Below are positions 6,877 through 57,365 of a stretch of 64,000 nt of DNA, piece after piece (position 1 is the stretch's first letter; each line of letters starts with the position of its first letter). The position numbers and the translations under genes are program-made. Source of the DNA: Octopus sinensis (Eukaryota); the NCBI RefSeq assembly GCF_006345805.1, contig NC_043012.1:43958001-44022000 (forward strand), written 5' to 3'. Under the pieces are notes generated by a model. That model did not search any database, was not told where the DNA came from, and saw only the letters and a list, made by a program, of their open reading frames with translations.

Positions 6877-6878
6877 GG

Positions 6879-6916
<38 letters not shown>

Positions 6917-7940: not shown

Positions 7941-7972
<32 letters not shown>

Positions 7973-8221: not shown

Positions 8222-8324
8222 TACCGAAAACAAACTAGCGAAAACGTGATACCAGTAATGATACACACACACACACACACACACGCACACACACGCACAC
8301 ACACACGCACACCTGAACTCAATT

Positions 8325-8535
8325 TATCTTTTTCTTATTTCAGTCATTTGACTATGGCCATGCTGGGACACCACCTTAGGTTTTTAGCCGAACATATCGA
8401 CCACAGGACTTATTTTTTAAAGTCTAGTACTTATTTTATAGGCATCTTTTGCCGAACCGCCAAGTTATGGGGACGTAAACGCACCAACATCAGTTGACAA
8501 GCGGTAGAGAAGGACACACAAACAGAGACACACTC

Positions 8536-9334: not shown

Positions 9335-9369
9335 GTTTTACGTTTCGAGCAAAGCTCTTCGTCAGAAAC
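9335..9369 (-). ncRNA. Minimal type I hammerhead ribozyme motif with intact core (dimer type)
   Basis: GTTT-CTGACGA-A-GAGC(TTT)GCTC-GAAA-CG-TA-AAAC. Stem I GTTT/AAAC, stem II 4 bp, stem III reduced to the palindrome ACGT, GUA triplet. Confidence 0.75.
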
Positions 9370-10774: not shown

Positions 10775-11768
10775 ACATCGTTATGTTTATGTTGAGAAGA
10801 GTTATCGTTATGTTTATGTTGAAAAGAGTTCTAAATAAGGGGAGGTAATAAGTGATTTCTTCCGGTGTAAGGAAGATAATCGCTTAAATTTTTTTTCCTT
10901 TCCTTTGGGGTGAATTTCTCTGTATAAGTATGTTGGGATGGTTAAGTCTGGGCTTGTTTTTTCAATGAAAAGTTTCCTCCTTGTTTAGTCTAGTTTGGTT
11001 GAGGATCCGAAAGCACATTGGTAAAATGGAAAGATTAAAAATTGTGGTAGTGTTGCTTTGCGCATTTCTCAATGTGCTCACTAAAAGGTATCATTCTGTA
11101 TTCTGGGAATGCAATCTGTTGTCGATGCAGTGTGCATCTACGTCTGAGTGATAGTCCCGTGGATCCCACGTAGTCTTGGTGGCAGCACGAGCATTTTATG
11201 ACATAAATTATGTTTTCAGAGGCACAAGTAAAATTAGATTTGATCTTGAATTTCTGTCCCTCTTTGAAGAGGAATTCTGATCCTTCTAGCAGGATTGGAC
11301 ATGTTGCACAGTTCGGTCTACCACATTTTTTTACTTTTGCATCCGTAATTTCAGAAAACAATTTTGCCTTTGTGAGAATCTTTTTTAAGTGATTTAGGTT
11401 GTTTGTAGCTTTTAATGATTTGGTGTATGTTTAGAATTTCCTTTAATTTGGGGTCCTTATGAAGTATTGGTAAATTCTGGGTGATGATGGTGAAGGCTTC
11501 TTTGTTTCTGGGGTTGTATGTAGATATGTAAGGTAGTATTTTCGGGGAAGGTGTGTTGTGTTGAACTTTTCTTAAAGTTTCTATGTTGATTTCTGTTGCA
11601 CGTCTGATCCCTTCCTCTATGAGTTGAGCTGGGTAATGTCTGTCAATTAGGGTGTTTTTGAGTTCTTGCAGTCTAAAGTTCCTGGTATTTTGTTCTGACA
11701 CTATTGTGCATATCCTTCTTGAAACATAAACATAACGATAACGATAACTCTTCTCAACATAACAACGT

Positions 11769-11807
11769 AAGAAATTTGAAAAGCTAAACGCGAAACCGGT
11801 CTTTCTT
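11769..11807 (+). ncRNA. Identical U3-A8 hammerhead-like motif in the inverted pLTR
   Basis: Exact reverse complement of 10736-10774. Confidence 0.55.
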
Positions 11808-11971
11808 CTAAACTATGTCATTGTAAGAAAAAAATTTATAATATTCTTCAGACATATTGACTTAAATATATATTCTTTAACCTTTTAAAACAAGCCTTCT
11901 GTAGTTTTTTCACTTTTTACTATTTTCTATATATTCAACCACGTGCTTTCACAAACCAACTTTCTTATCTA

Positions 11972-12840: not shown

Positions 12841-12942
12841 GAATTTGATAGCACTTTTAGTTCGAGCGGAAATCTAGAGGTGATAAGAAGCCAAAAGGGT
12901 ATGCTCCCCTTTCAGTGTTCCCAAATCCGAATCAAGGAGTTC

Positions 12943-12994
12943 TGAGCTGACGAAAGAAATGTCGATTTGACTAAATTAGAAACGTACGTTCTCA
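12943..12994 (+). ncRNA. Type I hammerhead motif, intact core, weak stem II, palindrome ACGTACGT
   Basis: TGAG-CTGACGA-(25 nt, only GTC/GAC pairs)-GAAA-CGTACG-TT-CTCA. Confidence 0.55.
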
Positions 12995-13181
12995 ATAACC
13001 TTTGCACTTGATTTTTTAATGTTTTCTTCCCATACCTTTGTGAGTTAGTTTGAGCAAACACTATCTGAGAGAGATCTTCTTTAAGTATTAGAAATAGCTA
13101 AAGAAATTCTTTAGCTGCTATTTCTAATGAGTTCAGTATGTGGCAAAGTAATTTATTTTACTAAGCCCTTATATATATATA

Positions 13182-24812: not shown

Positions 24813-25074
24813 TATAGCCTTGTTAAGCTATACGTAAACAAACGAGTGGAGACGAGTATGCATTTACCAAAAGTTTATTACTTTAGGTACAAAAGGGCTT
24901 AAGTCGTCAGTTATTTTTGTATTGTTCCTTCAGATTCGTTTCACGCACGCTGCTGTCATTCATCTGTTACCGTTCTCCGCCTGGAAGTCCTTTTCTTTCC
25001 TGGTGACCAACTTCCTAGTTAGCCCGCAACGAAGTATCTGTCTACAGTTCGTCTGTCACGAATCCTACCCTACC
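24813..25074 (-). repeat. 3' LTR of element A
   Basis: Direct repeat of 33135-33396; preceded on the minus strand by the PPT GGAGGGGGAG (25078-25087). Confidence 0.92.
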
Positions 25075-25376
25075 TAGCTCCCCCTCCAGTCCAATTTGGC
25101 CCGTTAAGTCTGGTTGTCAGTGATTCCTTCAGGCGGCGGTAAAATATCTCCACTAATCCGTTGGCCTGTGGGTGGTAGGCTGTTGTGCGGTTCATTGTGA
25201 TTCCGAAAAGATCATACATGTCATTCCACAGCTTTGAGGTGAATTGTGAACCCCGATTGGATGATATGCTATATGGAACACCGAAACGAGCGACCCAGTT
25301 TGCGATGAAAGCTCGGCTGACTTCTTGTGTTTCTGTACTGCGGAGAGGGATAGCTTCAAGCCAAGGTGTAAGGGTC

Positions 25377-25784
25377 TGTAACGTGAAAGGATCTATCATC
25401 GAAGCACTGGCAGGGTGTCGAGATCCTTTCTAGTCACATACAATAATTCTTGTAGAAAACAAACAGACGAAACTCAGGTTAAAGGTGAACAGACAACTTG
25501 GTTTATTGATTCATGGTTGTACGTTGTCTGATGGGGGAATAGACAGCCTCTGAGATACTGCTGGTGTTGGTCGTTGAGGTTGGTTGAAGCTGGTGTGTGG
25601 CTGTCAGAGCCAGGAAAACCGTGACCGATCGCAGTGCTGTCTTGAGCCGAAGAGAGAGATTTGAGGTTCGCGGGCTCGAGAGATGTTTTCCCGCACATGC
25701 GCATGGGGAAGACTTCCGGTGGCCACCCGGAAGTAGTCCCATTCTGCGCATGCGCGCCGAACCCTACACAGTAGCATCACTACA
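25377..25784 (-). repeat. 3' LTR of element B
   Basis: Identical to 29997-30404; PPT GGAGGGGAGCCC at 25785-25796 abuts it. Confidence 0.97.
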
Positions 25785-25883
25785 GGGCTCCCCTCCGAGT
25801 GCGAAGTACGGCAACCAGAATTTGTGGTGGTGCTGCAGAAAACAGAAGGCTTGCCGATCCCCCAGAAGACTTGGTACATACTA

Positions 25884-28800
25884 TTATACAATAATAAACA
25901 TTTTAAAGAAAGTTAAATGTAAATTGTTTTTGAAAGTTTCTTGGCCAATGCACTGTTCTGCCCGATTTTGTAACATACGGTGTGCTCGGGGCACCCGTTG
26001 ACGGCGAGGGTGGTGTTGTAGGAGCCGGTGAAGGTGTTTGTGCAGGTGAAGGCGTTTGTGCAGGTGAAGGCGTTTGTGCAGGTGTGAAAGTGTTGTTAAA
26101 GGTGCATAGGTGGGTGTGTCAAGGTTGTCATCAAAAGATGAAGACGTCTCAAAATGTGCCTTTTTTAAACGGTCCACGGAAACGGTCTCCGAACGACCAT
26201 TTATCTCAATCGTGAAAACCTTTGGTGTGCGAGAAAGCACACGAAAAGGTCCTTTATAGGGAGAAACAAGTGGGCCCTTCACAGAATCGTCCCGAACAAA
26301 AACATGCGACCAGGTGTTCATATCCGGTGGAAGATGGGACGGTGGAGATTGCTTTCTGGGAAGCATGGGCGGAAGGTTTGAAAAATATTCCCGCAGTCTG
26401 GTGACATAGGTCGCCGGATCATGGGGCGGGGAAGTGTCTGGCACACATCGTACCGGGCAATGCCAGTGTGGTACCATACAGCAGCTCTGGCAGCAGAAAA
26501 CCCCAGGTCTGCCTTGACAGCAGTCCGACAGCCGAGAAGCACAATGGGCAGAAATTCGATCCAGGACTGTGGGTCCGAAGAGGCACGAAGAGCGGCCTTG
26601 AGCTGTCTATGGAACCGCTCAACCAATCCATTAGACGCTGGATGGTAGCTTGTGGTGTGGATATGGTGCATACCCAAAATTCGCGACAATTCGCGAAATA
26701 GCGAGGCCTCAAACTGTCGTCCACGATCAGTTGTCAATCGGGACGGGACTCCGAAACGAGAAATCCAGTTTGAAACGAAAGCTCGCGCAACAGTCTCAGC
26801 AGAAATGTCTGCTATCGGAATGGCTTCTGGCCAGCGAGCGGAACGATCGACACAAGTTAATAGATAAGAGAACCCGCGACTCACAGGCCATGGTCCAACC
26901 AGATCGATGTGGACATGGCGAAAACGGGCCTCCGTGGGGGGAAATTGTCCAAGCGGGGCACGAACGTGCCGTTGAATCTTGGATCGTTGACACTTGGAGC
27001 AGGTGCGTGTCCAACAAGTAATTGTGCGACGCATATTCGGCCAGAAAAACCGAGCAGTGATTAATTTGAGGGTGGCAGCGATGCCAGGATGTGATAAGAA
27101 GTGCAGTGCTTCAAACACTGAGCGTTGATGGGTCTCAGGCACCAGTGGCCTGGGAGATCCAGTTGAAGTGTCACAAAGAATGGTGCCTTCGGCTGACGGA
27201 AGCGGAAGGTAGGAAAACTGGCAACAGGAGAACTTGGGAGAAGTTAAATCTAACGACGCCAAAGGTGGCTGCTCCTGCGAATGGCAGCTAAGTCGATAGC
27301 AGCAGGAGACGAAAGGGCGCAAACTGGAAGGCGAGAGAGAGCGTCAGCAGGAACGTTCTCTTTTCCAGGTATGTGTCGAATGTTGCTAGTAAATTGAGAG
27401 ATAAAATCCAGGTGCCGAAAAGCACGGGGTGAGAGTTTGTCCGTTTTTGAAAACAGGGCAAACGTAAGGGGCTTGTGATCCGTATAGATCACAAAATCTC
27501 GCCCTTCAAGTTGATGCTGGAAATGACGAACCGATAGGTAGATCGCTAGGAGCTCACGATCAAAGGTGCTGTATCGTCGTTCAGCTGGTTGCAGTTGACG
27601 GGAAAAGAAGGCTAGAGGTCGAACATGGTCATCCACTGTGTGTTGTAACACAGCGCCAATCGCAGTGTCCGATGCGTCCACAGTCAAAGAGAGAGAAGCA
27701 CCAGGAACTGGATGCAGCAAGCAAAGAAACAGAAGCCAGCTCCTTCTTAATGGACTCAAAGGCTGTCACTGCCTCAACAGAGAGGGTGACTTGACTGTCC
27801 TTTCTAGGAGAGTCCTTTAACAGCCTGGTGAGAGGTAGCAGCTTATCTGCACAACCGGGAATGAAGCGTCGGTAGAAATTGACCATCCCTAGATAATGCC
27901 TGAGCTGGCGCAAGGAAGTGGGGGGTGCGATGCGTTGAATGGCATCGACTTTTGACGAGAGGGGGCTGATTCCAGTCGAATCAATATGATGCCCTAGAAA
28001 ATCTAGGGAAGAGCGTCCGAAAACACACTTGTCGGGGTTTATGCGTATGCTATACGCGCGAAGACGCTGGAAGAGTTGAGAAAGGTGCCGGAGATGATTT
28101 TCTCGTGTGTCGCTCGCAATGAGTATGTCATCGACATAGGCAAACACAAAATCAAGACCGCGGACAACCTCATCAATGAAACGCTGGAAGGTGCTAGTAG
28201 CATTCCGCAAACCGAAACTCATGTACAAAAACTCAAAACACCCAAACGGGGTAGTGATTGCAGTTTTTGGAACGTCGGCTGGGTTGACCGGTATTTGGTG
28301 GTAAGCGCGTATCAGATCGACCTTCGAAAAAATGGTACAACCATGGAGATTTGCTGTAAAGTCCCGGAGATTTCTAATCGGATAGCGATCGGCTATTGTG
28401 ACGGCATTGAGGCGTCGATAGTCTCCAACCGGGCGAAAATCAGACGCCCTTTCGCGCCAAATGAAGGGGAGATGCCCATGGGCTGGTGGAGGGGCGTATA
28501 ATGCCAAGTTGAAGCATGTGCTCAAACTCGGCTCTGGCCGTTTTAAGTCGGTCTGGCGCTAGGCGCCGGGGGCGTGAGAATACAGGTGGCCCATTGGTGG
28601 TGATGAAATGGAGGGTCGAGTGGGTAGGATTTTCCGGTTTAAAGGCAATGTCCACTAGCTCCGGAAATGAAACCAAAAGAGAGTGAAAAGGGTCTCCAGA
28701 GTGGCAACAAAGAATGTCGGGCTAAGGACCGCAGTGGTGGAACTCCCAGTCGTGTGTAGAGAGCGACGTCGTGCTATCAAGAAGCCTCCGACGCCTGACA

Positions 28801-29614
28801 TCCACCAATAGGTTAAACCTATCCAGGAAATCAGCGCCGAGAATAGGATGCGGGATGTCAGCGATGACGAAAACCCATCGAAAGTCTCGACGAAGGTTGA
28901 GGTTGAGGCGCAGCGAAATCTGACCGTAAGTGGTTATGGGAGACGAGTCAATAGCATGCAAGACAATCGAAGAGCGCTTCGGCTTGTCTGCAGCCAGACG
29001 AAGGGGCCAGATGCTGCAACAGGAGCCGGTGTCTACCATGAAGAATTTCTCCGACACCAGATCTTTTACAAAAACTGCACGATTTTGGGAATGGCGATGG
29101 AAGAAGGTGACGTGCTCACCTCCTCCGGACTTAGTTTTCCGAGGGCTTGAAAATGCACGGCTGGGTACACCGATCTGCCTTTTGGTAGTAGAGCGACTAC
29201 GACTGCGTTGTCGGCGCTCGATCGCACGGGATAGATCGTCGATTCGCCGCGTGAGCGCATCAATCCGCTCGGTTAGTGAAATTTGCGCAGGGCCCCCTAT
29301 ACATGCACAGAGGCCTCGCGATGGAGATGGATTCGGAAATTCCAGTATTCCATCGGCCATCGTGGCAATCTGAATATTGCTCTCCCCGAACGTGTGTTGC
29401 GGCGGAGGATTTCTGCTTTCACAGACGCGTATGTGGCATCCGGGTGGGGACTTATTATTAGATCCCTGATCGATGCGGCGAGTCGGGGATGTAAGCCGGA
29501 ATATAGCAGGTGCAACTGCTGCTGTGGAGAAATGGCATGTGCATCAAAATACCACTCCACTTGGGCAAACCACAGGCCCATATCCCCCGTAAATGAAGGC
29601 AAACCTGAAGCCAT
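25884..29614 (-). pseudogene. gag-pol of element B, broken by deletions and frameshifts
   Basis: ORF pieces: gag (LWFAQVEWYF), protease (FMVDTGS), RT (YRRLN...FAYVDDILIAS), RNase H (LTVDASD...ELLAI...YTDH...ADALS), integrase (H..SH...[21 protein letters not shown]) and a GPF/Y-like GPLVSPYKGPF segment. Confidence 0.9.
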
Positions 29615-29984
29615 GCCTTTGTCGGAAGGAATCTGTGAGAAGGGGGCAGAAGGTATGGTCTAGAAGTGGAGAGAGAACACGTGGAACCGAGAAGGCAATT
29701 CAAAATTGTGTTTGTGTGTGCACCTCGTGGGTAGCAAAAAAAGGAATAGGTGTGTACAAGGAAAACAAAATACAGAAAAGGAAAAAAAATGAATGTGTGT
29801 GTTGTTTTCTTTTTTCTTTGTTTTTTTTTTTTTTGTACTGTGTGCGATGAATAAGGCTATTTGACCCACCTCGCCGTGCTGAAAAGGAGAAAATAGGAAA
29901 ATAAATGTGAATTTCCGCGCTCTTCGGCCCCAAAAAAAAACCTGTTCGCTGTGTCTTTTTCTATCCTGTTCTTTTTCTCAACTA

Positions 29985-29994
29985 GGGGTCACCA
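29985..29994 (-). promoter_or_regulatory. Primer binding site of element B (tRNA-Trp type)
   Basis: TGGTGACCCC lies 2 nt inside the 5' LTR and matches the 3' end of eukaryotic tRNA-Trp (complement TGGTGACCCCGACG). Confidence 0.75.
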
Positions 29995-29996
29995 AT

Positions 29997-30404
29997 TGTA
30001 ACGTGAAAGGATCTATCATCGAAGCACTGGCAGGGTGTCGAGATCCTTTCTAGTCACATACAATAATTCTTGTAGAAAACAAACAGACGAAACTCAGGTT
30101 AAAGGTGAACAGACAACTTGGTTTATTGATTCATGGTTGTACGTTGTCTGATGGGGGAATAGACAGCCTCTGAGATACTGCTGGTGTTGGTCGTTGAGGT
30201 TGGTTGAAGCTGGTGTGTGGCTGTCAGAGCCAGGAAAACCGTGACCGATCGCAGTGCTGTCTTGAGCCGAAGAGAGAGATTTGAGGTTCGCGGGCTCGAG
30301 AGATGTTTTCCCGCACATGCGCATGGGGAAGACTTCCGGTGGCCACCCGGAAGTAGTCCCATTCTGCGCATGCGCGCCGAACCCTACACAGTAGCATCAC
30401 TACA
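29997..30404 (-). repeat. 5' LTR of element B
   Basis: Identical to 25377-25784; AATAAA on the minus strand at about 30122-30127. Confidence 0.97.
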
Positions 30405-33118
30405 GGTCCACCAAGGTCAGTAGGTACGAGTAGCCCTGTGAAGCTGGTAGGGGGCCGAGAAGGTCGATATTGACATGGCTGAATCGGGCCTGAGGTGTAC
30501 TTTGGTGTGTTGACGGACCCTGGCTTGTTGACAGGGGATGCAGAACCTGGTCCAGTCCCCGATTTGCTTGGACATACAGTGCCAGATAAATATGCTTGAC
30601 AACAGCCGCCGTGTAGCTTTAGTACCTGGGTGGGAGAGTCCATGAATGACGTCGAAAACTTTCTTGCGCCAGGTTGATGGGACGATTGGTCGTGGCTTGC
30701 CAGTGGATAGTAGGATTGTACCGTTTGAGCCAAAATGTAAATCCTGCAAAGAAAGTGATGTGATGGCTGTGCGGTAGGCCCTGATCCCGTCATCTGTCTG
30801 TTGGGTTGCAGCCATAGCTTCGTAATCCAAGCCTTCTGTTATTGGTGCTAGGTAGGTGTGAGAGCGGGTAGGAGCACGAGAAAGTGCGTTGGAAACTGGG
30901 TTGCCTTTGCCAGCTATGCATTGTATGTCTGTGGTGTACTAAGAAATTACCGATAGCTGTCGTTGTTGGCGTGCCGACCAAGGCTCCGAGAGCTTGCTCA
31001 TAGCAAAGGTGAGTGGTTTGTGATCCGTGAATACTGTAAACGTGCGGCCTTCAAGGAAATACCGAAAGTGGCGGACACTTAGATGGACAGCCAGTAGTTC
31101 CCTGTCCAAAGCACTGTATTTCTGTTCAAGGGATCGTAGTTGTCGGCTGAAGAAGGCGAGTGGTCGCTACTGTTGATGTATTGTTCAAAAACACCTCCAA
31201 TAGTTGTGTCGGATGCATCAACTGTGAGTACAGTCCGAGCTGACATGTGAGGATGGGGCAGCATGGTTGCTTGGGCCAGGGCTTGTTTTCTGGATTCGAA
31301 GGCTGAAGTTATTGTACTGTCCCACTCCACCTGTCTTTTTGCACCTTCTTTTGATGGTGCCTTGTACAGGGGTCTCATCACGTTTGCTGCAGAAGGGTTG
31401 AAGCGATGGCAAACGTTTACCATGCCCACAAATTGATATAGAACCTTGTTTGTGGTGGAGCGTGGAAAGGATAGAATAGCTTTTACTTTACCTGGCAGGG
31501 GTGTAGCGCCAGCACTTGTGATTCGATGTCCCAAGAAGTCGATTTCTGTCGCACCAAAAATGCATATGGCGGGATTGATTACTAAACCATACTGTTCCAG
31601 CCAATCAAAAAGAGTCACTAGGTGCCTCTTATGTAGCTCTGCGTTTGGGCTTGCAATGAGGATGTCATCTAAGTATGCAAAGACAAAATCAAGACCTCTG
31701 CACAGAGTGTCCATCAAGCGTTGGAAGGATTGTGCCGCATTTTTCAGCCCAAAGCGTTACGTAGGAATTCGTACAGACTGAAAGGAGTGATCACAGCGGT
31801 TTTAGGTACATCGTCGTCTTGTACTGGTATTTGGTGGTATCCCCGGATGAGGTCAACCTTGGAGAAAACAGAGCACCCGGCTAGTTGGGCAGAAAAATCT
31901 TGTATATTTGGAATGGAGTAGCGGTCGGGTGTCGTATCCGCATTGAGACAGCGCTAATTTCCGCAGGGTCGATAACGTCCGTTGGATTTGGGGGCTACAT
32001 GCACAGGTAATGATCAGGGACTGCTTGATCGGCGAACAATACCCAAGGCCTCCATATTGTCGAATTCGGCCTTTGCGATTGGTTGCTATACGGGGGGGGG
32101 GGGTTATTGGGGGTTATTGGCGACCACTCACTTTCTTCAAATCCACCAGTAGTAAATGTGCTCGAAGAAACTCTGCACCGATTATGGGCTGATGGACATA
32201 GGTGATGGTGGAAGCCCATGTGTATTTTCGTGGGCCGACATTGAGGAAAAAGGTGCGACGACCGTATGCCTCGATTGTGGACCTGTTGGTGACTGTTAAA
32301 GGTTGGCTATGCTTTCCGTGATTGATGTCCCTTGCCGACGCCGGGATGATGCTGACTTCTGCTCCTGTGTCGATGAAGAACCTGCACCCGGAGCTGCGAT
32401 TGCGGACATAGAGGAGCATTTTGGCCATGTCTACCGGCCACCATGGTGTTCAATGGCAGCCGACCCTGGTGTTTCCCTGGTTCACTGGTGAAGGGATCCT
32501 GAAGCTACATGATTGTTTACATTTTGTCGCCTTTTTACCAAACTTTGCACGGTAGAAGCACAGGTCATCAAGCTTAACCCTACCCAGTCTCGGACCCGGC
32601 CCTATGGCGTTGACCACTGGATAAAAAAAATGCCTGTCAGTTGCCTTTGCTAATTGATTTCGGTCTGAGTTCTGAGGGCCTGGACCTGGGGTGGAAGCTT
32701 GCGGAGGAATATTTCTTTAAACAAAAAGGAAGGTAACTCACCGGGGGTGGGGACTAATGCCAACATCCTGTCCATCAGTTCTGACGGCTTGGAATCGTCT
32801 AATTCCTCCTCCAGTATCCTGGCTGCCACTTCTCTTTCACTGCGTCGGAATGTATCCACTTGCTTATCTTTCACTATGGCATATTTGTTTATTGGTGGGG
32901 GTGGGTTAAAATTTCCAGCAACCTCGTTGCTGTGTCTTCGTCTAGTGTCGCCACAGCTTGCGAGTACTCTGTTTGGTCAGCCGTTATCTTGTTTATATCA
33001 AATTGAGCTTCTGCCTGCACGAACCACAACTCAGCCCTCTTAGACCAGAACTGTGGTAGCCTCAGTGGTGTTTTGTTGCCAGCCATGTTTGTTTCGGTAG
33101 CGGGAGCTGCTGTCCGAT

Positions 33119-46110: not shown

Positions 46111-47665
46111 CTTACTAACAGTGACACTTGATGAATTCATTCTCCAAGAACAGTTTCCATTAGAAACTAGTCCCTTGCTTCTATGGTACCACAGCCATCA
46201 CACCTGCTCTTTTATTGTGATTTTCAGGTCAGCAGCACACGTTGTTTAGTTGGATTAAAAATGCTCATTCAATTCTCCATACTTAAAAGTTATTCCCCAT
46301 TTTATCTACATTAACCCTTTAGCATTTAAACCAGCAATGTCCAGCCCAAATTTTCTACTTTTATGTTCAAACTGGCCAGATACGCCGTACTTGAGAAAAC
46401 TCATCAAGCCAAGTGAGATCATAGCTGTGGTTGATGCTTGTGTCATGTAACTGGGCTGTTAAAAGCATATTTCAATTGTTGGGCGATATACTGTGCTTGT
46501 GAGATCATAGTCGTGGCCGATGCCTGCGCCATCTGATTGGCATGTATGCACCATTCATATATCAGGCCTCATGGAGGCAGTGACATCAAGCCAAGTGAAA
46601 TCGTAGTCAAGCCCAATGCCAATGTTGCATAACTGGCCTGTTAAAAGCACCCTTCAATCGTTGGGTGATATTCTATGCTTGTAAAGACCTGTCAAACTGA
46701 GTGAAATCATAGTTGTGGCCGATACCAGTGCCGTCTGACTGGCATCCATGCTAATGGCATGTAAAAAGCACCATTCAAGCATTAAGCCTCATGGAAGCAG
46801 TGACAGGTGACCAAGATCCTTGGCAATATACCATGCTTGTGTTGACCTGTCAAGTCAAGTGAGACCATAGTCGTGACTGATACCAGTATCAGGTCAATTG
46901 CACCCATGCTGGTGGCATGTGAAATATGCCTACTACATTCTCGGAGTGGTTGGTGTTAGGAAGGGCATCCAGCCATAGTAAACTATGTCAAATCAGATTG
47001 GAACCTGGCGCAGCCGCCTGGCTTACCAGTTTTCAGTTAAACCGTCCAACATGGAAAGCGAACATTAAATGATGATGATGATCATCATCATCATCAAAAT
47101 CTCAAGGCTATGAGATAATGCATGATTAATTCAAAACAATGTGAATAAATAAGAATTACATTTGACAGAGTAATTGGAATGCTGAAGGGTTAAAATAAAT
47201 AATATACAGCAAATGTTAACATCTCAGTAATAGTAACGAAAGATTAGGAATAACAATGGAAATCCAGTATAGTGAAGTATATGAAGACTGTGAAATTGAT
47301 GTAAAATGAGAGACATGATATGAAGTCAGTATAAATAATATACGAGGTGGTATCAAAAAGGTTCCTGGATTAGTTATCTGAATCTATAAAAGAGGGTTTG
47401 TATGTGTGTGCATATGTTCCTTATGCATTCCAAAACCGAGTTGCTGATTTTGATGTATGAGGTATCAAAAGATTCGGTAGGCATTTGGCTACCAACTAGG
47501 TTCAGTTACTGCTGGCTTATAGTTAAACACTGGTAGGTTATAGCCTAAAAGTTTCAAAGTAAAATCTAAAAGAAACGTATTGAAGATACAACATAAAGTG
47601 AACAGGTTATCAATGAACACAGGCTTGTTTTGTTAGTCTGGCAGAAATCATAAAGTGAGATTTAC

Positions 47666-47741
47666 CTTAACAAGAGAGCTACACTCCAACGGTAACCGCT
47701 GGTCCAATTACACAAACGGTATTTGTAAAAACTGCGATTTC
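47666..47741 (-). CDS. TM2D3: TM2D3-like exon 4
   Basis: ctcag|GA AAT...TTA AG|gtaaat; (G)NRSFYKYRLCNWTSGYRWSVALLL(S); 76 nt, phases 1 and 2 match the neighbouring exons. Confidence 0.95.
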
Positions 47742-49049: not shown

Positions 49050-50455
49050 TGCTGGTTTCTGAATATATTTGTCAAGCAGGCAAACCACAAATCCCTTCAG
49101 GTAGATGGCCCTGCTCGATCTGCAGAAAAGGCGTAGGTAGAAACTGTATAAGATGTACTCAGTGTAAGCTATGGACACATAAGAGGTGCAGCAATATCAA
49201 AGGGAGGCTAACTGGGAGGATAGCTTTTGTATGTGGCAGATGCTCGGGAGCAATAAACACTGAAAATGCGCAGAGAACAACTTCCGCCACATTCCAGGGA
49301 GAAAAACTACAAGTAGTTGATAGCTTCCGTTACCTAGGTGACCAAGTCAGTAGAGGGGGAGGGTGCACTGAAAGTGTAGCTGCTAGAATAAGAATAGCCT
49401 GGGCTAAGTTCAGAGAGCTCTTACCTCTGCTGGTGATAAAGGGCCTCTCACTCAGAGTAAAAGATAGACTGTACGACGCATGTGTATGAACAGCCATGCT
49501 ACATGGCAGTGAAACATGGGCCTTGACTGCTGAGGATATGCGTAAGCTCGCAAGAAATGAAGCCAGTATGCTCCGATGGATGTGTAATGTCAGTGTGTAT
49601 ACTCGACAGAGTGTTAGTGCCCTGAGAGAAAGGTTGGACCTAAGAAGCATCAGATGTGATGTGCAAGAGAGACGACTGCACTGGTATAGTGATGTGGCGA
49701 GAATGGATGTGGATAGCTGTATGAAAAAGTGCCACACCCTAGCAGTTGAGGGAACCTGTGGAAGAGGTAGACCCAGGAAGACCTGGGATGAGGTGGTGAA
49801 GCATGACCTTCAAACATTGGGCCTCACCGAGGCAATGACTAGTGACCGGGACCTCTGGAAATATGCTGTGCTGCAGAAGACTCGGCAAGAACAAGTGTGG
49901 CCTATGCTAGAAGTGTAACCCGTCCACTTATGCGTGCCTTTTCTTCATTGGACACTAAACTCTGCTTATGAAGACCAGTTGGGGCAAGTGAAATTGAAGT
50001 CGAAATCAAAGTCGGTGACTGGCATCCATGCTAGTGGAGTGCTAAGAGTACCATACGAGTGAGATCGTTGCCAGAGCAACAAGCTGGCCTTTGTGCCAAT
50101 GGCACGTTAAACACACCAGTTGAGCATGATCGTTACTGTGTCGCCTTACTAGCACTTGTGCTGGTGGCACGTGAAAAAACATTCAAGTGAGGTTGTTGCC
50201 AGTGCCAGTGCCACTGGACTGGCTCCTGTGCAGGTGGCACATAAAAAGCACTATTTGAGTGTGGCTGTTGCCAGTACCACCAAACTGGCCTTCATGCTGG
50301 TGGCATGTAAAAGCACCCACTACACTCTCGAAGGGCATTCAGCTGTAGAAACTGCCAGATCAGATTGGAGTCTGGTTTGCCAGACCTCAGTCAAATCGTC
50401 CAACCCATGCTAGCATGGAAAGCAGATGTTAAATGATGATGATGATGATGATGAA
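49050..50455 (+). mobile_element. RTE-type LINE, 5'-truncated, with a PHD-like finger inside the RT region; antisense in TM2D3 intron 3
   Basis: ORFs 49049-49489 and 49496-49918 (FRYLGDQV, MLHGSETWA, GRGRPRKTW), a long 3' UTR and a (GAT)n tail. Confidence 0.85.
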
Positions 50456-51481: not shown

Positions 51482-52641
51482 TACAAAATATAAATTAAGT
51501 GAAAACTAAATACAACACTTTAAACTATATACATTAAATCAAATTATTAATTAATATATTAATTTAATAAACATCCAAATAAAGTTTAATACCCATTAAG
51601 CAATTAATACTAAAAACCTTAATATTAATTAATATACATAATGCTAGTACAAGCCATAAATACTGGAATCAAAAATATGAAATGGTTCAAATATAGACAC
51701 ACCCATTATATAAACTAACTATACAATTAATATATATGTAGTATCTATAGATTTAATATATAACTCAATAATACAGTTGACCAAAATATCAATTAATATA
51801 AAAACTAATTTACTTAAATGTAATACTACTTGATAAATATACCACCTAATTATTAAATAATGTATTGTCTAACAAAATTAATTCTCAAATTAAATTATAT
51901 GTAATACGTTAAATCTCTTTATAAACACTAAGACCTATATATTTTTTTACGTTTAAAATTCAATTATATTATTTTCATCGGACAAGCTAAGTAACGGTTT
52001 TTGCTTATAAATATTATTTGGCTTTTGAATTATATTGGGTTTGATTATTATTGCTGTTGAAATATTATTATTTTTATATATATTTTATTGATAGTTATAA
52101 GTTATGATAGTTATTAATTATGATATCTATTTATTTAGAATGCTTTATTATTATTTTTATAAAGGGATTTAACGTATTACATATAATTTAATTTGAGAAT
52201 TAATTTTGCTAGACAATACATTATTTGTATATATAAATTATCAATAATAATTGTATTTAACTGCTATTTCTAAATTTCGGTATGTGGTGAAGCAATTTTG
52301 CTAAACCCTAATTATAATTATGTTTATAATTATAATAATTTTTGTATAAGTTTACCAATAATGGTTCTTTTAACATACCAAACTACTTGGTAAGATTATC
52401 AATTATAAATTGATTAATTAATATTACCCTTTATTATTATTGATATAATTCTCTCCCTGATAGTAAACTGCAGTTTCTGTGGGATTACTCGTAACGCACA
52501 TGGGTGATTGGGAGAAGGTGCAAGCCCTAACTCGTCTGCATGAATTCAGAATACTGGTTTTTTGGATGTTAATTTTGTTTGATGGCGCTCGGTCAAATAA
52601 ATATCTTGATTACTAGTGCTCTCAAATTTATAACTGAAATC

Positions 52642-52708
52642 CTATACTGATGATGGAAATAAGGTATGAGTTATTTTATATATCTTTAATCCAGAAACGC
52701 GTATATAG
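52642..52708 (+). ncRNA. Intact type I hammerhead motif (dimer type), antisense to TM2D3
   Basis: CTATA-CTGATGA-TGGA(32 nt)TCCA-GAAA-CGCG-TA-TATAG. Confidence 0.8.
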
Positions 52709-52886
52709 TTAATCAAAGCCGGGTGGATTCGTTATTTTCCCTCTTTGCCTGTATGAGTTGAGAGTATTGCTGTCTGGGAGATATCTTATGGTAGCAGAAT
52801 AGTATTTAACTGCTATTTCTAAATTTCGGTATGTGGTGAAGCAATTTTGCTAAACCTTAATTATAATTATGTTTATAATTATAATA

Positions 52887-52936
<50 letters not shown>

Positions 52937-53137
52937 TTTTTAATAATATATTATTATTAATATTAGGAAATCAATATCAAAACTCCTCAGAAAGATATAT
53001 ACGTGTGAAAAATAATCGTTGTATTAAAAATATATATAAATAAATATAACTATGTATAAAAATATATGTAAATATGTATAAGTATAAATATATAATGTAT
53101 ATGACAGTTTAAAAGTTTTGAATTAAGTATTTAAAGC

Positions 53138-53227
53138 ATCTTACGATCGTTTCACAGAAGTGCTGTCCCTATAATGAAATCCTATATTGATAAGCATTTA
53201 TAGACAACTCTTCTGCTCTTCAGAGAT
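53138..53227 (-). ncRNA. Intact type I hammerhead motif (dimer type), sense strand of TM2D3 intron 3
   Basis: ATCT-CTGAAGA-GCAGAAGAGTTGTC...GACAGCACTTCTGT-GAAA-CGATCG-TA-AGAT. Confidence 0.82.
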
Positions 53228-53329
53228 ATAAAATTTGAATTCTGTATAACATATCGAATAGTAGTTTTTTCTTTAAATTTGAAGTAATACTATAAAATAT
53301 TATTTGTTTGAAAGATAAATTAAAAATTA

Positions 53330-53660
53330 CTGCTTTTGATGCTATATGCATGTGAGACTTGGGCCTTGATGCAAAGAGAACATCTGCTTTTGGCGCAGAG
53401 AGATATGGAAAGTTCGATGTTGGGAATCTTGCTAAGAGATCACATTCAGAAAGAGGAGATCAGGGATAAAACTGGAGTAAAGGACATTGTCACACAATAC
53501 CACCAGGTAAAGCTACAATGGGCTGGTCATGTCACAAGGTTCACCGGCAATTGGTGGACCCATGTAGTTTCCGAGTGATACACATAGGAATGGAAGAGAC
53601 CACTTGGAAGACCTCCAGTCAGGTGGGAAGATGATTTGAGAAACTTACAAAAAAAATTGG
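53330..53660 (+). mobile_element. RTE-1-type LINE C-terminal fragment
   Basis: MLYACETWAL...IRDKTGVKDIV...KLQWAGHVTR...RPLGRPPVRWEDDL. Confidence 0.75.
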
Positions 53661-54108
53661 ACATGAATTAAGAGATGATATGGTTGGACAACATCCAAAG
53701 TATTGGCATAGTGGGCATTGGTAATAGGCATATAAAGTGGATGAAAGATCTATACTGAGTGAAAAGTGCCAAGACTTGCTATAAGAGGGTACATGTGCTA
53801 GTGCCAGACTAGAATCATTTGGACATAACTTGTTGAATATGGCAATGGTCAATCTCATAGATAAGAAAATACAGGACTGAAAGTATCTCGGAAATGTATT
53901 TAACTTGTGCAAGTTATAGCAAAATACAAGTCAAAAATGACAAAAAAGAGGAGAAACGAAAAAAAGGAACAAGCAGAAAGAAAAGTCTTGTATCAATATA
54001 GCATTGCATATGAACGACAGGATTTGTTCATTCATTCATTTTAAGTCCCAACTGACACACAGTGTCCTGTACATTTGTTAAGTTTTGATAATTAAACTTA
54101 AAACTCAC

Positions 54109-54268
54109 CTAAGCACATTACTGGCTCTTTAACTTTACACGTTGAAACATACTTCTGTCTTGGTGCTGCAACAACTCGGCAAGAAGTCGAGGAATTGCAA
54201 GTATAGTTCGATGGATCCAGCTGGTAACAAAACCTACATTCTAACTGCCTTTCAAATTTTTCTGGACC
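54109..54268 (-). CDS. TM2D3: TM2D3-like exon 3
   Basis: ttcaaag|GGT...TTA G|gtgagt; GPEKFERQLECRFCYQLDPSNYTCNSSTSCRVVAAPRQKYVSTCKVKEPVMCL(G) aligns with the CRFCWQL...PRQRY...HCLG region of TM2D3. Confidence 0.95.
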
Positions 54269-54480: not shown

Positions 54481-55779
54481 CTAATAAATTTGTACTTGAC
54501 AAAAATATAGAGTAACCCATCAGATTAATTATAATTGAACATAAAAACAAACATCATCATCATCGTTTAACATCCGCTTTCCATGCTAGCATGGGTTGGA
54601 CGATTTGACTGAGGACTGGCGAACCAGATGGCTGCACCAGGCTCCAATCTTGATCTGGCAGAGTTTCTACAGCTGGATGCCCTTCCTAACGCCAACCACT
54701 CTGAGAGTGCTTTTACGTACCACCGGCACAAGGGCCAGTCAGGCGGTACTGGCAACGGCCATGAAAAAATTGTATTTTTTATTATTTTAATATATATATG
54801 TCTGTGGACGAAGAGATGGTGGCAGGCAATTTAACATGGGAGTATTCTTAATTCTACGTATTAATTCATGTTATCTACAACCAGATTATTTTGGAATGTT
54901 ACTTGTTGTGAACTAGTTTCCTACCTGAAAGCTCTATGCCTCAACCACTTAATGCCATCACACATCTAAATATGTCTTCAAAATCCCCATCCGACTGTTA
55001 AACATATTTATGTTTTAACATGGTCAAGGTTTAGGAAGTTGATAGCAATTGTAGCAAAGTACTTTGCTTGCTGCAGTGTTTTGGTGACTGTTATAAATGA
55101 AATAAGAGAGGAGAGAGCTACTATGACCAGCAAACTCATCTCTTTTATGCGACATAACAGATAGGTGATTGTAGTTTAAGAGTTTGTTTTGTTATTCAAT
55201 AATTTTAGTAGACAGCAGCCAACCAAAGTATTAAATCAGTTTCTCAATCAGAAGTTATTCCATTTTTGTGGATATGCTACGTTTAGATACTGAGACTTAG
55301 TTTAAAATATGTAGCCTTCATTTGAAAGGCAGTAGATAATTAATTAAATAAGATTTGATCATTACGTTGAGTTTGTTAATTAATTGTGTAGAAGCTCCTT
55401 TAACACAAACAACTTCAAATCTACAAAATTAGAAAACCCTCAGTAAAACATAAATAGTACATCTATCCATGACCAGAGATGAACTTCTTTCTCTTCAATG
55501 ATATAGCTTAAAACAAGGTAAATAAGTTACTGTTTTCTTTAGCAAAGACTTCATAAATAACCATAAAGGCTTAAGCCAGTATGGTTAAGTATCTTGACCA
55601 AGAACACAATGTTTGCAGTGGAATGCACACTAACAACGTAATCTCTTATCCACACTGTAATTATTCCTTTTCAATTTTTATCTTTTTCCATCTTGAGTCA
55701 AATTAAGTTCATGGTTAAAATAAAAGACTGACCTGCCTTAATTTTATGATTTAATAGCAATGATGATGATGATGATAAC

Positions 55780-56610
55780 CCTTTTTATTACACGTAAAAG
55801 GCCTGAAATTTGCAGGGAGAGGATAGTTGATTACATCGACCCCAGTGTTTCAGTTACAAAATTTATCGACCCCAAAAGGATGAAAAGCAAAGTTGACCTC
55901 AATGGAATCTGAACTCAGAATGTAAAGACGGATGAAATGGCATTAAACATTTTGCCTGGCATGCTAACGATTCTGCCAGCACCTTAATAATCCTTTCTAC
56001 TATAGGCACAAAGCTAGAAATTTGGTGGGAGGGGTTAAGTCGATAACATTGACCCCAATACTCAGCTGGTACATAATTTAGGATGAAAGGCAAAGTCAAC
56101 CTCAGCAGAATTTGAACTCAGAACAATGAAGACAGACAAAATACTGCTAAGCATTTTGCCCAGTGTGCTAATGATTGTGTCATCTCACTGTCTTCAGATC
56201 TCAACTGATTGGAAGTGTTATCATGTACATTGTTTTGTCTTGGTATAAAAGATGGGCAACAGCAAATATTCTGCTCAATACCAGAGATTTGCTTGTCAGT
56301 TGGTCCCACATTGGTCCCAGGGATCAACTGGTACTTATTTTATCGACCCCGAAAGGATGAAAAGCAAAGTCTGCCTCGGCAGAATTTGAACTTAGAATAT
56401 GATGAGGGATGAAATACTACTAAGCATCATTTTGCCTGGCACATTAATGATTCTGCCAGCTGGCTGATTTAACAATAATAATAATAATAATGCTTTCTAT
56501 TATAGGCACAAGGCCTGAAATTTGGAGGGGGGTTGAACTCAGAATGTAGCAGCAGACAAATTACTGCTAAGCATTTTGCCTGGTGTGCTAACAATTCTGC
56601 CAGCTCACAG
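55780..56610 (-). mobile_element. Cluster of about four SINE family-3 fragments in TM2D3 intron 2
   Basis: Repeated ATCGACCCC.AAAGGATGAAA.GCAAAGT...GAATTTGAACTCAGAA; other copies at about 37385-37555 and 42680-42850. Confidence 0.7.
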
Positions 56611-56632
56611 CAGCAGCAACAACAATAATAAC

Positions 56633-56674
<42 letters not shown>

Positions 56675-56676
<2 letters not shown>

Positions 56677-57365
56677 CCTCATGCAGTAACCAGGCAGTGG
56701 CTCTCATGGCTTCTGATCTTAACTGATTGGAAGTGTTATCATGTACATTGTTTTGTCTTGGTATAAAAGATGGTCTACAGCAAATATTCTGCTCAATACC
56801 ACAGATTTACTTGTCAGTTGTTTGACCTTAACCAGTTGAGCATGTTCCTTAGTGGCTGACGATATGTGCATCCCTGATCACGAGCAGAAGTAGTGGGGGA
56901 GCATCATAGCCATGTGTTGAGAGGGATTCTTAGAGGTCTGAATAATTCACCTTTGGAAACATGGGTGTTTCGTTCATCATCCTAAAGCAACCCTTATTCA
57001 GGGACCTTTTGAGCAGGATAGGCTACTCGACCTGAAGAAAATTCTAACTGGGCCCCACCTGCAAGGTCATGCGCTGTTTATTTTGATATAAGATCACCAT
57101 GTCGCGCACATATGGTTGTGATGCGTGTACCTAGTGTACCCTTATCAGACGGGTAGTCATGATGGGTATGCTGGGCTTTGTATATTTTACCCCAGTGTCA
57201 CTTTGATGGCATGCACTGCTCTCTCACTCAATAATAATAATAATGGTTGTGATGCATGTGCCTGGTGTACCCTTATCAGACAAATAGTCATGATGGGTAT
57301 AATGGGCTTCGTATATTTTACCCCAGTGTCACTTTGATGGCATGCACTGTTCTCTCACTCAATAG
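56675..57365 (+). mobile_element. Retroposon 3'-end-like repeat with its last about 120 bp tandemly duplicated
   Basis: GGTTGTGATGC.TGT.CCT.GTGTACCCTTATCAGAC...CTCTCACTCAATA occurs at about 57113-57235 and 57244-57365, each followed by (AAT)n. Confidence 0.55.

What the first reader, a model, noticed from the sequence alone, without database searches (positions are those of the whole stretch)
53138..53227. Apparently intact hammerhead ribozyme on the sense strand of TM2D3 intron 3
Seen: the minus strand has every canonical type I hammerhead element. These are stem I ATCT/AGAT, core CUGAAGA, a stem II of about 14 bp closed by G-U, GAAA, stem III formed by the palindrome ACGAUCGU, and a GUA triplet (predicted cut between 53142 and 53141). 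It lies about 880 nt downstream of the exon 3 donor, in the same orientation as the pre-mRNA. Known: Penelope pLTRs carry small hammerheads with palindromic stem III that cleave mainly as dimers. Inference: as a monomer, stem III is only 2-3 bp, so the host transcript may be spared unless a partner RNA with the same palindrome is present. That would make intron cleavage conditional on expression of the cognate retroelement family.
Basis: partly seen in the sequence, partly recalled or inferred. Interest (0 to 1): 0.8.

Follow-up and report, generated by a model that had tools for sequence, protein, structure and literature searches.

The report
Retroelement-type hammerhead motif in octopus intron
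The hammerhead ribozyme motif is really there, in the sense strand of intron 3 of the Octopus sinensis TM2D3 gene, but it is most likely one more relic of the hammerhead-carrying Penelope-like retroelements that litter this region, not a regulator of the gene.

Summary
The window is Octopus sinensis chromosome CM016874.1, and TM2D3 lies on the minus strand. At 53228-53137 (minus), 881 nt downstream of the exon 3 donor, the sequence has every invariant hammerhead core base: a 4-5 bp helix I, a 13-14 bp helix II, the palindrome ACGAUCGU as helix III, and a GUA cleavage triplet.

It is not a chance match. Structure descriptors expect 0.001-0.004 such motifs per shuffled window, and the window holds three:
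- this motif;
- a second palindromic-helix-III hammerhead on the opposite strand, about 430 nt away, inside a 549-nt element with a pseudo-LTR-like partial tandem;
- a textbook Penelope-type minimal hammerhead at 9335-9369.

Decayed copies of the other two families are also present, and every one abuts a (TA)n microsatellite.

The best explanation is a lineage-specific relic of a Penelope-like or retrozyme-type insertion, carried passively in the intron. It has a G10.1-U11.1 wobble in place of the conserved G-C. It has no partner copy in the pre-mRNA and no relative in the other octopus DNA I could scan. The hammerhead fold makes up about 0.2% of the predicted monomer ensemble.

The proposed "conditional cleavage" is untested and quantitatively demanding. 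This is a new member of a known kind, of low interest.

The parts
53137..53228 (-). The hammerhead motif of the finding, called HHR(-) in this report: a type I hammerhead, whole extent including the U.G fifth pair of helix I.
   Evidence: It is the only hit of the strict descriptor in the window.
53217..53223 (-). Core strand C3 U4 G5 A6 A7 G8 A9 (CUGAAGA).
   Evidence: read directly from the sequence.
53154..53216 (-). Helix II. It has 7 bp, an A.A mismatch, then 6-7 bp, and is closed by a 33-35-nt AU-rich distal loop that can pair further. The closing pair is G10.1.U11.1.
   Evidence: RNAfold's minimum-energy structure contains this helix.
53151..53153 (-). Core bases G12 A13 A14.
53143..53150 (-). 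Helix III, the palindrome ACGAUCGU (A15.1 to U16.1). As a monomer it forms 2 bp plus a GAUC loop. Between two copies it forms 8 bp.
   Evidence: Self-duplex energy is -10.0 kcal/mol and the cofold minimum-energy structure uses it. The 8-mer occurs once in the window.
53141..53142 (-). A17 (53142) and N1.1 (53141). The predicted scissile bond lies between them.
   Evidence: using standard hammerhead numbering.
52892..52944 (.). A (TA)18 microsatellite followed by a T14 run (A14 on the minus strand). It lies between the 3' sides of the two convergent hammerhead-bearing segments.
   Evidence: Penelope-like elements have a reported bias for inserting into microsatellites (PMC8557442).
52642..52708 (+). 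Second hammerhead, called HHR(+), on the opposite strand: CUAUA-CUGAUGA-helix II (4 bp + 8 bp)-GAAA-CGCGU-A-UAUAG. Helix III is the palindrome ACGCGU.
52249..52897 (+). A 549-nt unit (52349-52897) that carries HHR(+). A 5'-truncated copy of its last 100 nt precedes it: the direct repeats 52249-52348 and 52798-52897 are 96% identical. This is a partial tandem that looks like a pseudo-LTR.
   Evidence: A diverged copy of the same family lies at 12938-13165.
53347..53950 (+). C-terminal reverse-transcriptase and tail fragment of a LINE, antisense to TM2D3. It is orthologous to a longer copy in O. bimaculoides. The shared sequence ends at 53346/53347, next to the AT-rich block that holds the hammerheads. 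The upper end (about 53950) is approximate.
54109..54268 (-). TM2D3 exon 3 (GPEKFER...PVMCLG), with its donor GT at 54108-54107.
47665..47739 (-). TM2D3 exon 4 (NRSFYKYRLCNW...). Its 3' boundary is approximate.

Best explanation
The motif is a genuine hammerhead-lineage sequence of the class carried by Penelope-like retroelements (PLEs) and their non-autonomous derivatives. That class has a short helix I, a long helix II and a palindromic helix III that is completed only between two copies.

It arrived with a retroelement fragment that inserted at a (TA)n microsatellite in TM2D3 intron 3, in the lineage leading to O. sinensis and O. vulgaris. It lies tail-to-tail with a second hammerhead-bearing element. 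It is now transcribed passively as part of the intron.

As a lone copy it should cleave very slowly or not at all, for four reasons:
- its monomer helix III is only 2 bp;
- it has a G10.1.U11.1 wobble;
- no loop-loop tertiary contacts were recognised;
- alternative folds compete with the hammerhead fold.

It is therefore expected to have no effect on TM2D3 expression.

Shown: the motif, its position, its non-random nature, and the neighbouring hammerhead families with their microsatellite context. Inferred: its retroelement origin, and its weak or absent activity.
For: 1. All invariant core positions and all three helices are present.
2. Descriptors expect 0.0025 (hairpin helix III) or 0.004 (palindromic helix III) hits per shuffled window. 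The window has 1 and 3 respectively. Real motifs of this class are thus a few hundred times commoner here than chance ones.
3. A second palindromic-helix-III hammerhead lies about 430 nt away on the other strand, in a unit with a 100-nt partial-tandem repeat. PMC4209133 reports pairs of minimal hammerheads 100-700 bp apart on opposite strands. PMC8557442 describes pseudo-LTRs formed by partial tandems, inverted copies and a microsatellite insertion bias for PLEs.
4. A textbook PLE minimal hammerhead sits at 9335-9369. It has the extra base after A9, a G10.1-C11.1 pair and an ACGU helix III. Two decayed copies of it have a compensatory change in helix I.
5. A decayed copy of the HHR(+) family at about 12.9 kb keeps a paired helix I and a palindromic helix III with different letters.
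6. An ORF fragment resembling a PLE GIY-YIG endonuclease lies at 11038-11812 (weak Pfam hit, E=0.018).
7. Each of the four hammerhead-type loci examined for this (53137-53228, 52642-52708, 9335-9369 and the decayed copy near 12.9 kb) has a (TA)n run within about 200 nt on its 3' side, whereas only 16% of window positions lie within 260 nt of one on either side. The cleavage site lies 193 nt from the 3' end in HHR(+) and 196 nt in HHR(-).
8. The motif is present and identical in O. vulgaris, where the surrounding 800 nt are about 99.6% identical, so this shows no extra constraint. It is not found in the assembled O. bimaculoides intron or in Argonauta.
9. The hammerhead-competent monomer fold is -18.1 kcal/mol against a minimum of -20.7, about 0.2% of the ensemble.
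Against: - No second copy of this particular hammerhead or its flanks was found. I looked in the 64-kb window, in 29 kb of O. bimaculoides sequence and in 21 kb of another O. sinensis locus. Its membership of a repeat family is therefore inferred from context and not shown.
- It has no significant sequence similarity to the neighbouring HHR(+) element.
- It lacks two hallmarks of PLE minimal hammerheads: the unpaired base between A9 and 10.1, and the G10.1-C11.1 pair.
- No PLE open reading frame adjoins it.
- A 2-bp helix III with a tetraloop is described as typical of invertebrate type I hammerheads (PMC7229834), so some monomer activity cannot be ruled out.
- Nearest-neighbour folding ignores the tertiary contacts of the core.
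- The O. bimaculoides intron has a 3.4-kb assembly gap, so absence there is not proven.
Confidence: 0.75

Rival explanations
1. The intronic hammerhead is a conditional switch: it is silent as a monomer, but it cleaves TM2D3 pre-mRNA when transcripts of a cognate retroelement family supply a partner copy that completes helix III (and helix I) in trans.
For: The palindromic 8-nt helix III gives a predicted intermolecular duplex of -10 kcal/mol, and RNAcofold's best homodimer uses it. The motif is on the sense strand. The core is intact. Dimer-dependent cleavage is documented for this class of hammerhead (PMC4209133, PMC6765202).
Against: - No cognate copy was found anywhere I could look (a metagenome scan also found nothing).
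- The partner must also match helix I.
- My estimated Kd of tens of nM needs thousands of partner RNAs per nucleus.
- PLE hammerheads cleave poorly even as dimers (PMC4209133).
- The G.U wobble at 10.1-11.1 is a further handicap.
- The region is lineage-specific and shows no sign of constraint.
- From my own knowledge, slow intronic cleavage is tolerated by splicing.
Confidence: 0.05
2. The motif is an active monomeric ribozyme. Its 2-bp helix III plus GAUC tetraloop, as in many invertebrate type I hammerheads, suffices, and the intron is cut constitutively, with or without consequence for the mRNA.
For: The core is intact and helix II is very stable. PMC7229834 describes invertebrate hammerheads with a 2-bp helix III capped by a tetraloop.
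Against: - Helix I is only 4-5 bp and open-ended, and I recognised no loop 1 / loop 2 tertiary contacts of the kind thought to be needed at physiological Mg2+ (PMC4209133 introduction).
- The 10.1-11.1 pair is a G.U wobble.
- The hammerhead fold is about 0.2% of the predicted ensemble.
- Single PLE-type motifs showed no detectable cleavage in vitro (PMC4209133).
Confidence: 0.1
3. A chance match. An AU-rich hairpin happens to be flanked by CUGAAGA and GAAA and by short complementary runs.
For: The core specifies only about 13 bases and helices I and III are short. One of 400 shuffles produced a descriptor hit, so a 2.7-Gb genome (size from my own knowledge) would hold some tens of chance hits at the loosest thresholds. 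No homologous copy was found. The G.U at 10.1-11.1 is atypical.
Against: - Expected 0.001-0.004 per window, against three observed with the same descriptor.
- Helix II has 13-14 bp and helix III is a perfect 8-nt palindrome with two CpGs in a region of 28% G+C. Both are far above the descriptor's minimum.
- It lies 430 nt from another palindromic hammerhead and about 195 nt from a (TA)n run, like the other copies.
Confidence: 0.05

Closest known systems
Minimal hammerheads of Penelope-like elements (Cervera and De la Pena 2014, PMC4209133; Lunse, Weinberg and Breaker 2017)
   Same: Type I topology, CUGANGA and GAAA boxes, a short helix I (4-5 bp), a long helix II, and a palindromic helix III that can only be completed between two copies. 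A second motif lies on the opposite strand within 100-700 bp. A microsatellite and a partial-tandem element lie next to it.
   Different: No unpaired base between A9 and 10.1. G10.1.U11.1 in place of G-C. Helix II is much longer (63 nt with a large distal loop, against 6-8 bp). Helix III is an 8-nt palindrome, where the minimal forms have 2-4 nt. No PLE ORF or demonstrable pseudo-LTR contains it. No family consensus is available.
Non-LTR retrozymes and satellite hammerheads of metazoans (newt satellite 2; mussel, coral and axolotl retrozymes; PMC7229834; bioRxiv 10.64898/2026.07.22.740005)
   Same: A type I hammerhead with a weak helix III (1-2 bp plus a palindromic tetraloop), in low-GC non-coding repeats related to PLE pseudo-LTRs. 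About 42-44% of Xenopus retrozyme copies overlap introns.
   Different: Those occur as head-to-tail tandem repeats of 150-400 bp, so the partner lies in cis. They usually keep loop 1 / loop 2 contacts. Here there is a single copy with no tandem partner.
[quoted passage not shown]
   Same: A hammerhead on the sense strand of an intron of a protein-coding gene.
   Different: Those are highly conserved across amniotes, have canonical tertiary contacts and are found by Rfam models. This one is confined to O. sinensis and O. vulgaris, lacks those contacts and shows no evidence of constraint.

Membership tests
Hammerhead ribozyme, type I (motif level) | Invariant core C3 U4 G5 A6 N7 G8 A9 ... G12 A13 A14, an A15.1-U16.1 pair, and H17 at the cleavage site. 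| tested here: met
   CUGAAGA at 53223-53217, GAA at 53153-53151, A15.1 at 53150 paired with U16.1 at 53143, and A17 at 53142.
Hammerhead ribozyme, type I (motif level) | Three helices around the core, with helix I open-ended. | tested here: met
   Helix I 4-5 bp, helix II 13-14 bp, helix III 2 bp as a monomer or 8 bp as a dimer.
Hammerhead ribozyme, type I (motif level) | A conserved G10.1-C11.1 pair closing helix II. | tested here: not met
   G at 53216 faces U at 53154, a G.U wobble. PMC4209133 lists G10.1-C11.1 as highly conserved.
Hammerhead ribozyme, type I (motif level) | A match to the Rfam hammerhead covariance models. | tested here: not met
   No hit at the gathering score or at E<=10 on 551 nt. 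The control matters here: the textbook PLE minimal hammerhead at 9335-9369 and HHR(+) are also missed, so the test does not discriminate for this class.
Hammerhead ribozyme, type I (motif level) | Site-specific self-cleavage. | not testable with these tools
   This needs in vitro transcription or mapping of RNA ends.
PLE minimal hammerhead (Cervera and De la Pena 2014) | A short helix I (4-5 bp) and a long helix II (6-8 bp or more). | tested here: met
   Helix I 4 bp plus U.G, helix II 7 + 6-7 bp.
PLE minimal hammerhead (Cervera and De la Pena 2014) | Palindromic positions 15.2-16.2 and loop 3, giving a helix III competent for dimer formation. | tested here: met
   ACGAUCGU is a perfect palindrome. 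Self-duplex energy is -10.0 kcal/mol and the cofold minimum-energy structure uses it.
PLE minimal hammerhead (Cervera and De la Pena 2014) | An unpaired nucleotide between A9 and 10.1. | tested here: not met
   Treating G 53216 as the extra base would leave U 53154 unpaired before G12, so the only consistent register has no extra base. The copy at 9335-9369 does have it.
PLE minimal hammerhead (Cervera and De la Pena 2014) | Located in the pseudo-LTR of a Penelope-like element, or in a truncated copy of one. | tested here: inconclusive
   No PLE ORF adjoins it and it shows no similarity to the neighbouring pseudo-LTR-like unit. The context is nonetheless PLE-like: a convergent hammerhead partner, a (TA)n run, and the same 193-196 nt from the cleavage site to the 3' end.
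PLE minimal hammerhead (Cervera and De la Pena 2014) | Belongs to a multi-copy consensus family showing covariation. | not testable with these tools
   No whole octopus genome was searchable. There are no relatives in about 114 kb of scanned octopus DNA. The other two hammerhead families in the window do show compensatory variation.
Non-LTR retrozyme / satellite hammerhead | Head-to-tail tandem copies that provide a partner in cis. | tested here: not met
   It is a single copy. ACGATCGT occurs once in 64 kb, and no tandem repeat covers it.
Conserved intronic hammerheads (HH9/HH10 type) | Conservation in the orthologous intron across distant species. | tested here: not met
   It is identical in O. 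vulgaris, but the flanks are about 99.6% identical too. It is absent from the assembled O. bimaculoides intron, which has a 3.4-kb gap, and from Argonauta hians.

The most novel reading that the evidence does not exclude
A lone intronic hammerhead, inert on its own, is completed in trans by abundant RNAs of a cognate retroelement family sharing the same helix I and the ACGAUCGU helix III. TM2D3 pre-mRNA would then be cut only when that family is expressed. This would be a ribozyme-based link between transposon activity and a host gene.
Probability: 0.03. Interest if true: 0.75.

Novelty: new member of a known kind. Interest (0 to 1): 0.2.

Why it matters
If the best explanation holds, the finding is routine annotation. 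It adds cephalopod examples to the thousands of Penelope-type hammerheads known in metazoan genomes. It also shows that Rfam's hammerhead models miss this class, including a textbook copy in the same window, so structure descriptors are needed to annotate them. It would matter more only if the motif were shown to cut the TM2D3 intron in vivo, alone or with a trans partner. That would give a natural case of transposon-dependent ribozyme control of a host transcript.

Tried and rejected
1. Rfam at gathering and permissive thresholds found no hammerhead hits for any of the motifs, including the textbook one. I therefore rejected it as a discriminating test.

2. I tested whether the 100-nt direct repeat (period 549) continues as a tandem repeat through HHR(-). 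Global alignment shows no similarity beyond the first 100 nt. A 16-nt near-match, GAAATCCTATAYTGAT, shared by 52631-52646 and 53176-53191, is compatible with chance.

3. I tested whether HHR(-) is an inverted copy of the HHR(+) element. The local alignment score is no better than for shuffles.

4. Conservation test. O. vulgaris is too close to be informative, O. bimaculoides has an assembly gap, and Argonauta lacks the motif.

5. Attempts to collect octopus PLE loci or more copies mostly failed:
- A protein search with the PLE endonuclease fragment found nothing.
- Exact-ORF look-ups next to the motif found nothing.
- A metagenome scan for CTGAAGA-N45-75-GAAACGATCGTAAGAT found nothing.
- Two further octopus loci were reached through an LTR-retrotransposon integrase. 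The one I could scan, L005, gave no good hammerhead.
- Loci L003, L004 and L006 never appeared in the script folder. L003 and L004 were searched only with the pattern tools, and L006 was not scanned.

6. Lunse et al. 2017 (PMC5785218) is not held in the library. It is cited only through PMC6765202.

Full report
**What is there**

On the minus strand of 53228-53137 the sequence reads:

U-AUCU / CUGAAGA / GCAGAAGAGUUGUC ... GACAGCACUUCUGU / GAA / ACGAUCGU / A / AGAU-G

Every invariant hammerhead position is present:
- C3-A9 at 53223-53217;
- G12-A14 at 53153-53151;
- A15.1 at 53150, paired with U16.1 at 53143;
- A17 at 53142.

- **Helix I** is 4 bp plus a U.G pair.
- **Helix II** is 13 pairs with one A.A mismatch, and RNAfold's minimum-energy structure contains it.
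- **Helix III** is the perfect palindrome ACGAUCGU. In a monomer it can form only 2 bp closed by GAUC.

One departure from the consensus is clear. The pair closing helix II is G10.1.U11.1, not the highly conserved G-C.

**Where it is**

The window is 100% identical to Octopus sinensis chromosome CM016874.1. The exons on the minus strand translate to TM2D3, XP_029646457.1. Their positions are:
- exon 1, about 62490-62370;
- exon 2, 57668-57429;
- exon 3, 54268-54109;
- exon 4, 47739 to about 47665;
- exon 5, about 44060-43887.

The motif lies in intron 3, on the sense strand, 881 nt from the donor.

**Is it more than chance?**

I tested this with two structure descriptors.
- The first requires CUGANGA, GAAA, helix I >=4 bp, helix II >=4 bp, helix III >=2 bp and H17. 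It finds only this site on both strands of the window. It hit 1 of 400 shuffles that preserve dinucleotides within 2-kb blocks.
- The second is tuned to the dimer class and requires helix III to be a perfect palindrome. It expects 0.004 hits per window (0.001 for palindromes of 6 nt or more) and finds three.

Chance and real motifs both scale with the amount of sequence read. The useful number is therefore their ratio, which is a few hundred to one in favour of real hammerhead-lineage sequences in this DNA.

Rfam does not report any hammerhead. It also misses a textbook Penelope-type minimal hammerhead in the same window and the second motif described below. That negative result therefore carries little weight.

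**The surroundings**

1. **A second hammerhead, HHR(+), at 52642-52708 on the plus strand.** It reads CUAUA-CUGAUGA-helix II (4 + 8 bp)-GAAA-CGCGU-A-UAUAG, with the palindromic helix III ACGCGU. It sits in a 549-nt unit (52349-52897). The last 100 nt of the unit are repeated, 96% identical, immediately upstream at 52249-52348. This is the partial-tandem arrangement that creates the pseudo-LTRs of Penelope-like elements (PMC8557442).

2. **A diverged copy of the same unit at 12938-13165.** The spacing from its hammerhead remnant to the shared tail is the same 62 nt. Its helix I (UGAG/CUCA) and helix III (ACGUACGU) use different letters but still pair, while helix II is broken.

3. **A canonical minimal hammerhead at 9335-9369 (minus).** It reads GUUU-CUGACGA-A-GAGC-UUU-GCUC-GAAA-CGU-A-AAAC. 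It has the extra base after A9 and the G10.1-C11.1 pair that Cervera and De la Pena list as hallmarks (PMC4209133). Two further copies, at 4233-4268 (+) and 1221-1256 (-), carry A6-to-U and a compensatory helix I, CUUU/AAAG.

4. **An ORF fragment at 11038-11812 (minus).** It has the look of a PLE GIY-YIG endonuclease (NIIYVIKCSCCHQDYVGSTG...). The Pfam GIY-YIG hit is weak: E = 0.018, below the cut-off.

5. **(TA)n microsatellites.** Each of the four hammerhead-type loci I examined for this (the finding's motif, HHR(+), the copy at 9335-9369 and the decayed copy near 12.9 kb) has a (TA)n run within about 200 nt on its 3' side. Only 16% of window positions lie within 260 nt of such a run on either side. 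The finding's motif and HHR(+) converge on the same (TA)18 run. Their cleavage sites lie 196 and 193 nt from the respective 3' ends.

PMC4209133 reports that pairs of minimal hammerheads 100-700 bp apart on opposite strands are a recurrent arrangement.

**Origin and age**

In O. vulgaris the 800 nt around both motifs are about 99.6% identical to the window and the motifs are unchanged. At that distance this says nothing about constraint.

In O. bimaculoides the flanking intron aligns at about 91% up to 53347. The shared sequence there is a LINE reverse-transcriptase fragment, antisense to the gene. From that point O. bimaculoides continues with more LINE sequence, while O. sinensis has a 2.5-kb AT-rich block (53346-50843) that holds both hammerheads. 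The O. bimaculoides intron has a 3.4-kb run of N, so absence there is likely but not proven. The small Argonauta hians gene has nothing comparable. The motif is thus lineage-specific and shows no evidence of purifying selection.

**What could not be shown**

The finding's motif has no detectable relative.
- It has no significant similarity to the HHR(+) unit or to the 12.9-kb copy.
- No copy was found in 29 kb of assembled O. bimaculoides sequence or in 21 kb of another O. sinensis locus.
- A metagenome scan found none.

Its assignment to a retroelement family therefore rests on its architecture and its context. It does not rest on homology.

**How it most likely behaves**

Folding the 92-nt monomer alone gives these values:

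| Fold | Energy |
|---|---|
| Hammerhead-competent fold | -18.1 kcal/mol |
| Minimum-energy fold | -20.7 kcal/mol |

The hammerhead-competent fold is about 0.2% of the ensemble. Nearest-neighbour models ignore core tertiary structure, so this figure is only indicative.

Two copies are predicted to pair through the 8-bp helix III: -51.6 kcal/mol against 2 x -20.7.

In a double hammerhead both helix III and helix I form between the copies. I infer this from the topology drawn in PMC4209133. A partner would therefore need AUCU/AGAU as well as the palindrome. ACGATCGT occurs only once in the 64-kb window, which contains the whole gene, so the pre-mRNA has no partner in cis.

A dimerisation energy near -10 kcal/mol corresponds to a Kd of tens of nM. 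By my estimate that means thousands of partner molecules per nucleus.

Three further points bear on activity:
- Single PLE-type motifs showed no cleavage in vitro, and dimers cleaved only weakly (PMC4209133).
- The motif has a G.U wobble at 10.1-11.1.
- I recognised no loop 1 / loop 2 tertiary contacts.

I therefore expect little or no self-cleavage. I also recall that slow ribozyme cleavage inside an intron does not prevent splicing (Dye et al. 2006), whereas fast-cleaving variants do abort processing (Fong et al. 2009). Both points come from my own knowledge and were not checked here.

**Comparison with what is known**

The motif works like, and most resembles, the hammerheads of Penelope-like elements and the related non-LTR retrozymes.

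| Test | Result |
|---|---|
| Core bases | met |
| Short helix I | met |
| Long helix II | met |
| Palindromic helix III | met |
| Extra base after A9 | not met |
| G10.1-C11.1 pair | not met |
| Location in a pseudo-LTR | inconclusive |
| Multi-copy family with covariation | not testable |

It is not a tandem retrozyme, because it is a single copy. It is not a conserved intronic hammerhead of the amniote HH9/HH10 kind. An intronic location is ordinary for such repeats: about 42-44% of Xenopus retrozyme copies overlap introns (bioRxiv 10.64898/2026.07.22.740005).

**Verdict**

The classification as a Penelope-type, dimer-class hammerhead is supported. The regulatory inference is unsupported, though not excluded. 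This is a new member of a known kind, of low interest.

Noticed in passing
window 52249-52897 (+), hammerhead at 52642-52708: A 549-nt non-coding unit carries a hammerhead with helix III ACGCGU and a U10.1-A11.1 closing pair. A 5'-truncated copy of the unit's last 100 nt precedes it (96% identical), and a (TA)18 run follows it. It looks like a small non-autonomous Penelope-like or retrozyme-type element with a pseudo-LTR.
   Followed up: partly
window 12938-13165 (+): A diverged copy of the same unit. Its hammerhead remnant reads CTGACGA ... GAAACGTACGTT-CTC, with helix I and the palindromic helix III kept through different letters and helix II broken. It has the same 62-nt spacing to the shared tail and is again followed by (TA)n.
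   Followed up: partly
window 9335-9369 (-); 4233-4268 (+); 1221-1256 (-): A textbook Penelope-type minimal hammerhead, GUUU-CUGACGA-A-GAGC-UUU-GCUC-GAAA-CGU-A-AAAC, flanked by microsatellites. Two related copies carry A6-to-U in the core and a compensatory helix I (CUUU/AAAG). Rfam misses the intact copy even at E<=10.
   Followed up: partly
window 11038-11812 (-): Two overlapping stop-free stretches resemble the linker and GIY-YIG endonuclease of a Penelope-like element (NIIYVIKCSCCHQDYVGSTG). The Pfam GIY-YIG hit is only E=0.018, and a protein search found no relatives.
   Followed up: partly
window 53176-53191 (+) vs 52631-52646 (+): The 16-mer GAAATCCTATAYTGAT occurs at both places with one mismatch. 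At the second place it is helix I plus the start of the core of the plus-strand hammerhead. At the first place its complement forms part of the helix II loop of the finding's motif. The offset of 545 nt is close to the 549-nt repeat period. It may be chance: I estimated about 0.25 for the region, less given the register.
   Followed up: partly
window about 25000-33000 (-): Long stop-free stretches encode reverse transcriptase, RNase H and integrase of one or two LTR retrotransposons. The integrase is 75-78% identical to proteins annotated 'K02A2.6-like' in O. bimaculoides and O. sinensis. This explains the GC-rich block at 26-32 kb.
   Followed up: partly
window 55760-56820 and 50080-50450, 54550-54630: Multiple copies, in direct and inverted orientation, of a short interspersed repeat (e.g. 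...GGCCTGAAATTTGGAGGG...TTATCGACCCCGAAAGGATGAAAGGCAAAGTC...). From memory it resembles an abundant octopus SINE. A 77-nt pair that is 95% complementary brackets 4.1 kb, including exon 3 and both hammerheads.
   Followed up: no
window about 4100-8500: A segmental duplication within the window: blocks near 4106-5935 recur near 6250-7812. There is a run of N at about 6330-6440, suggesting an assembly join or collapsed repeat.
   Followed up: no
L002 17510-20960 (O. bimaculoides TM2D3 intron 3): A 3.4-kb run of N in the orthologous intron of the O. bimaculoides assembly. It prevents a clean test of presence or absence of the hammerhead-bearing block.
   Followed up: yes
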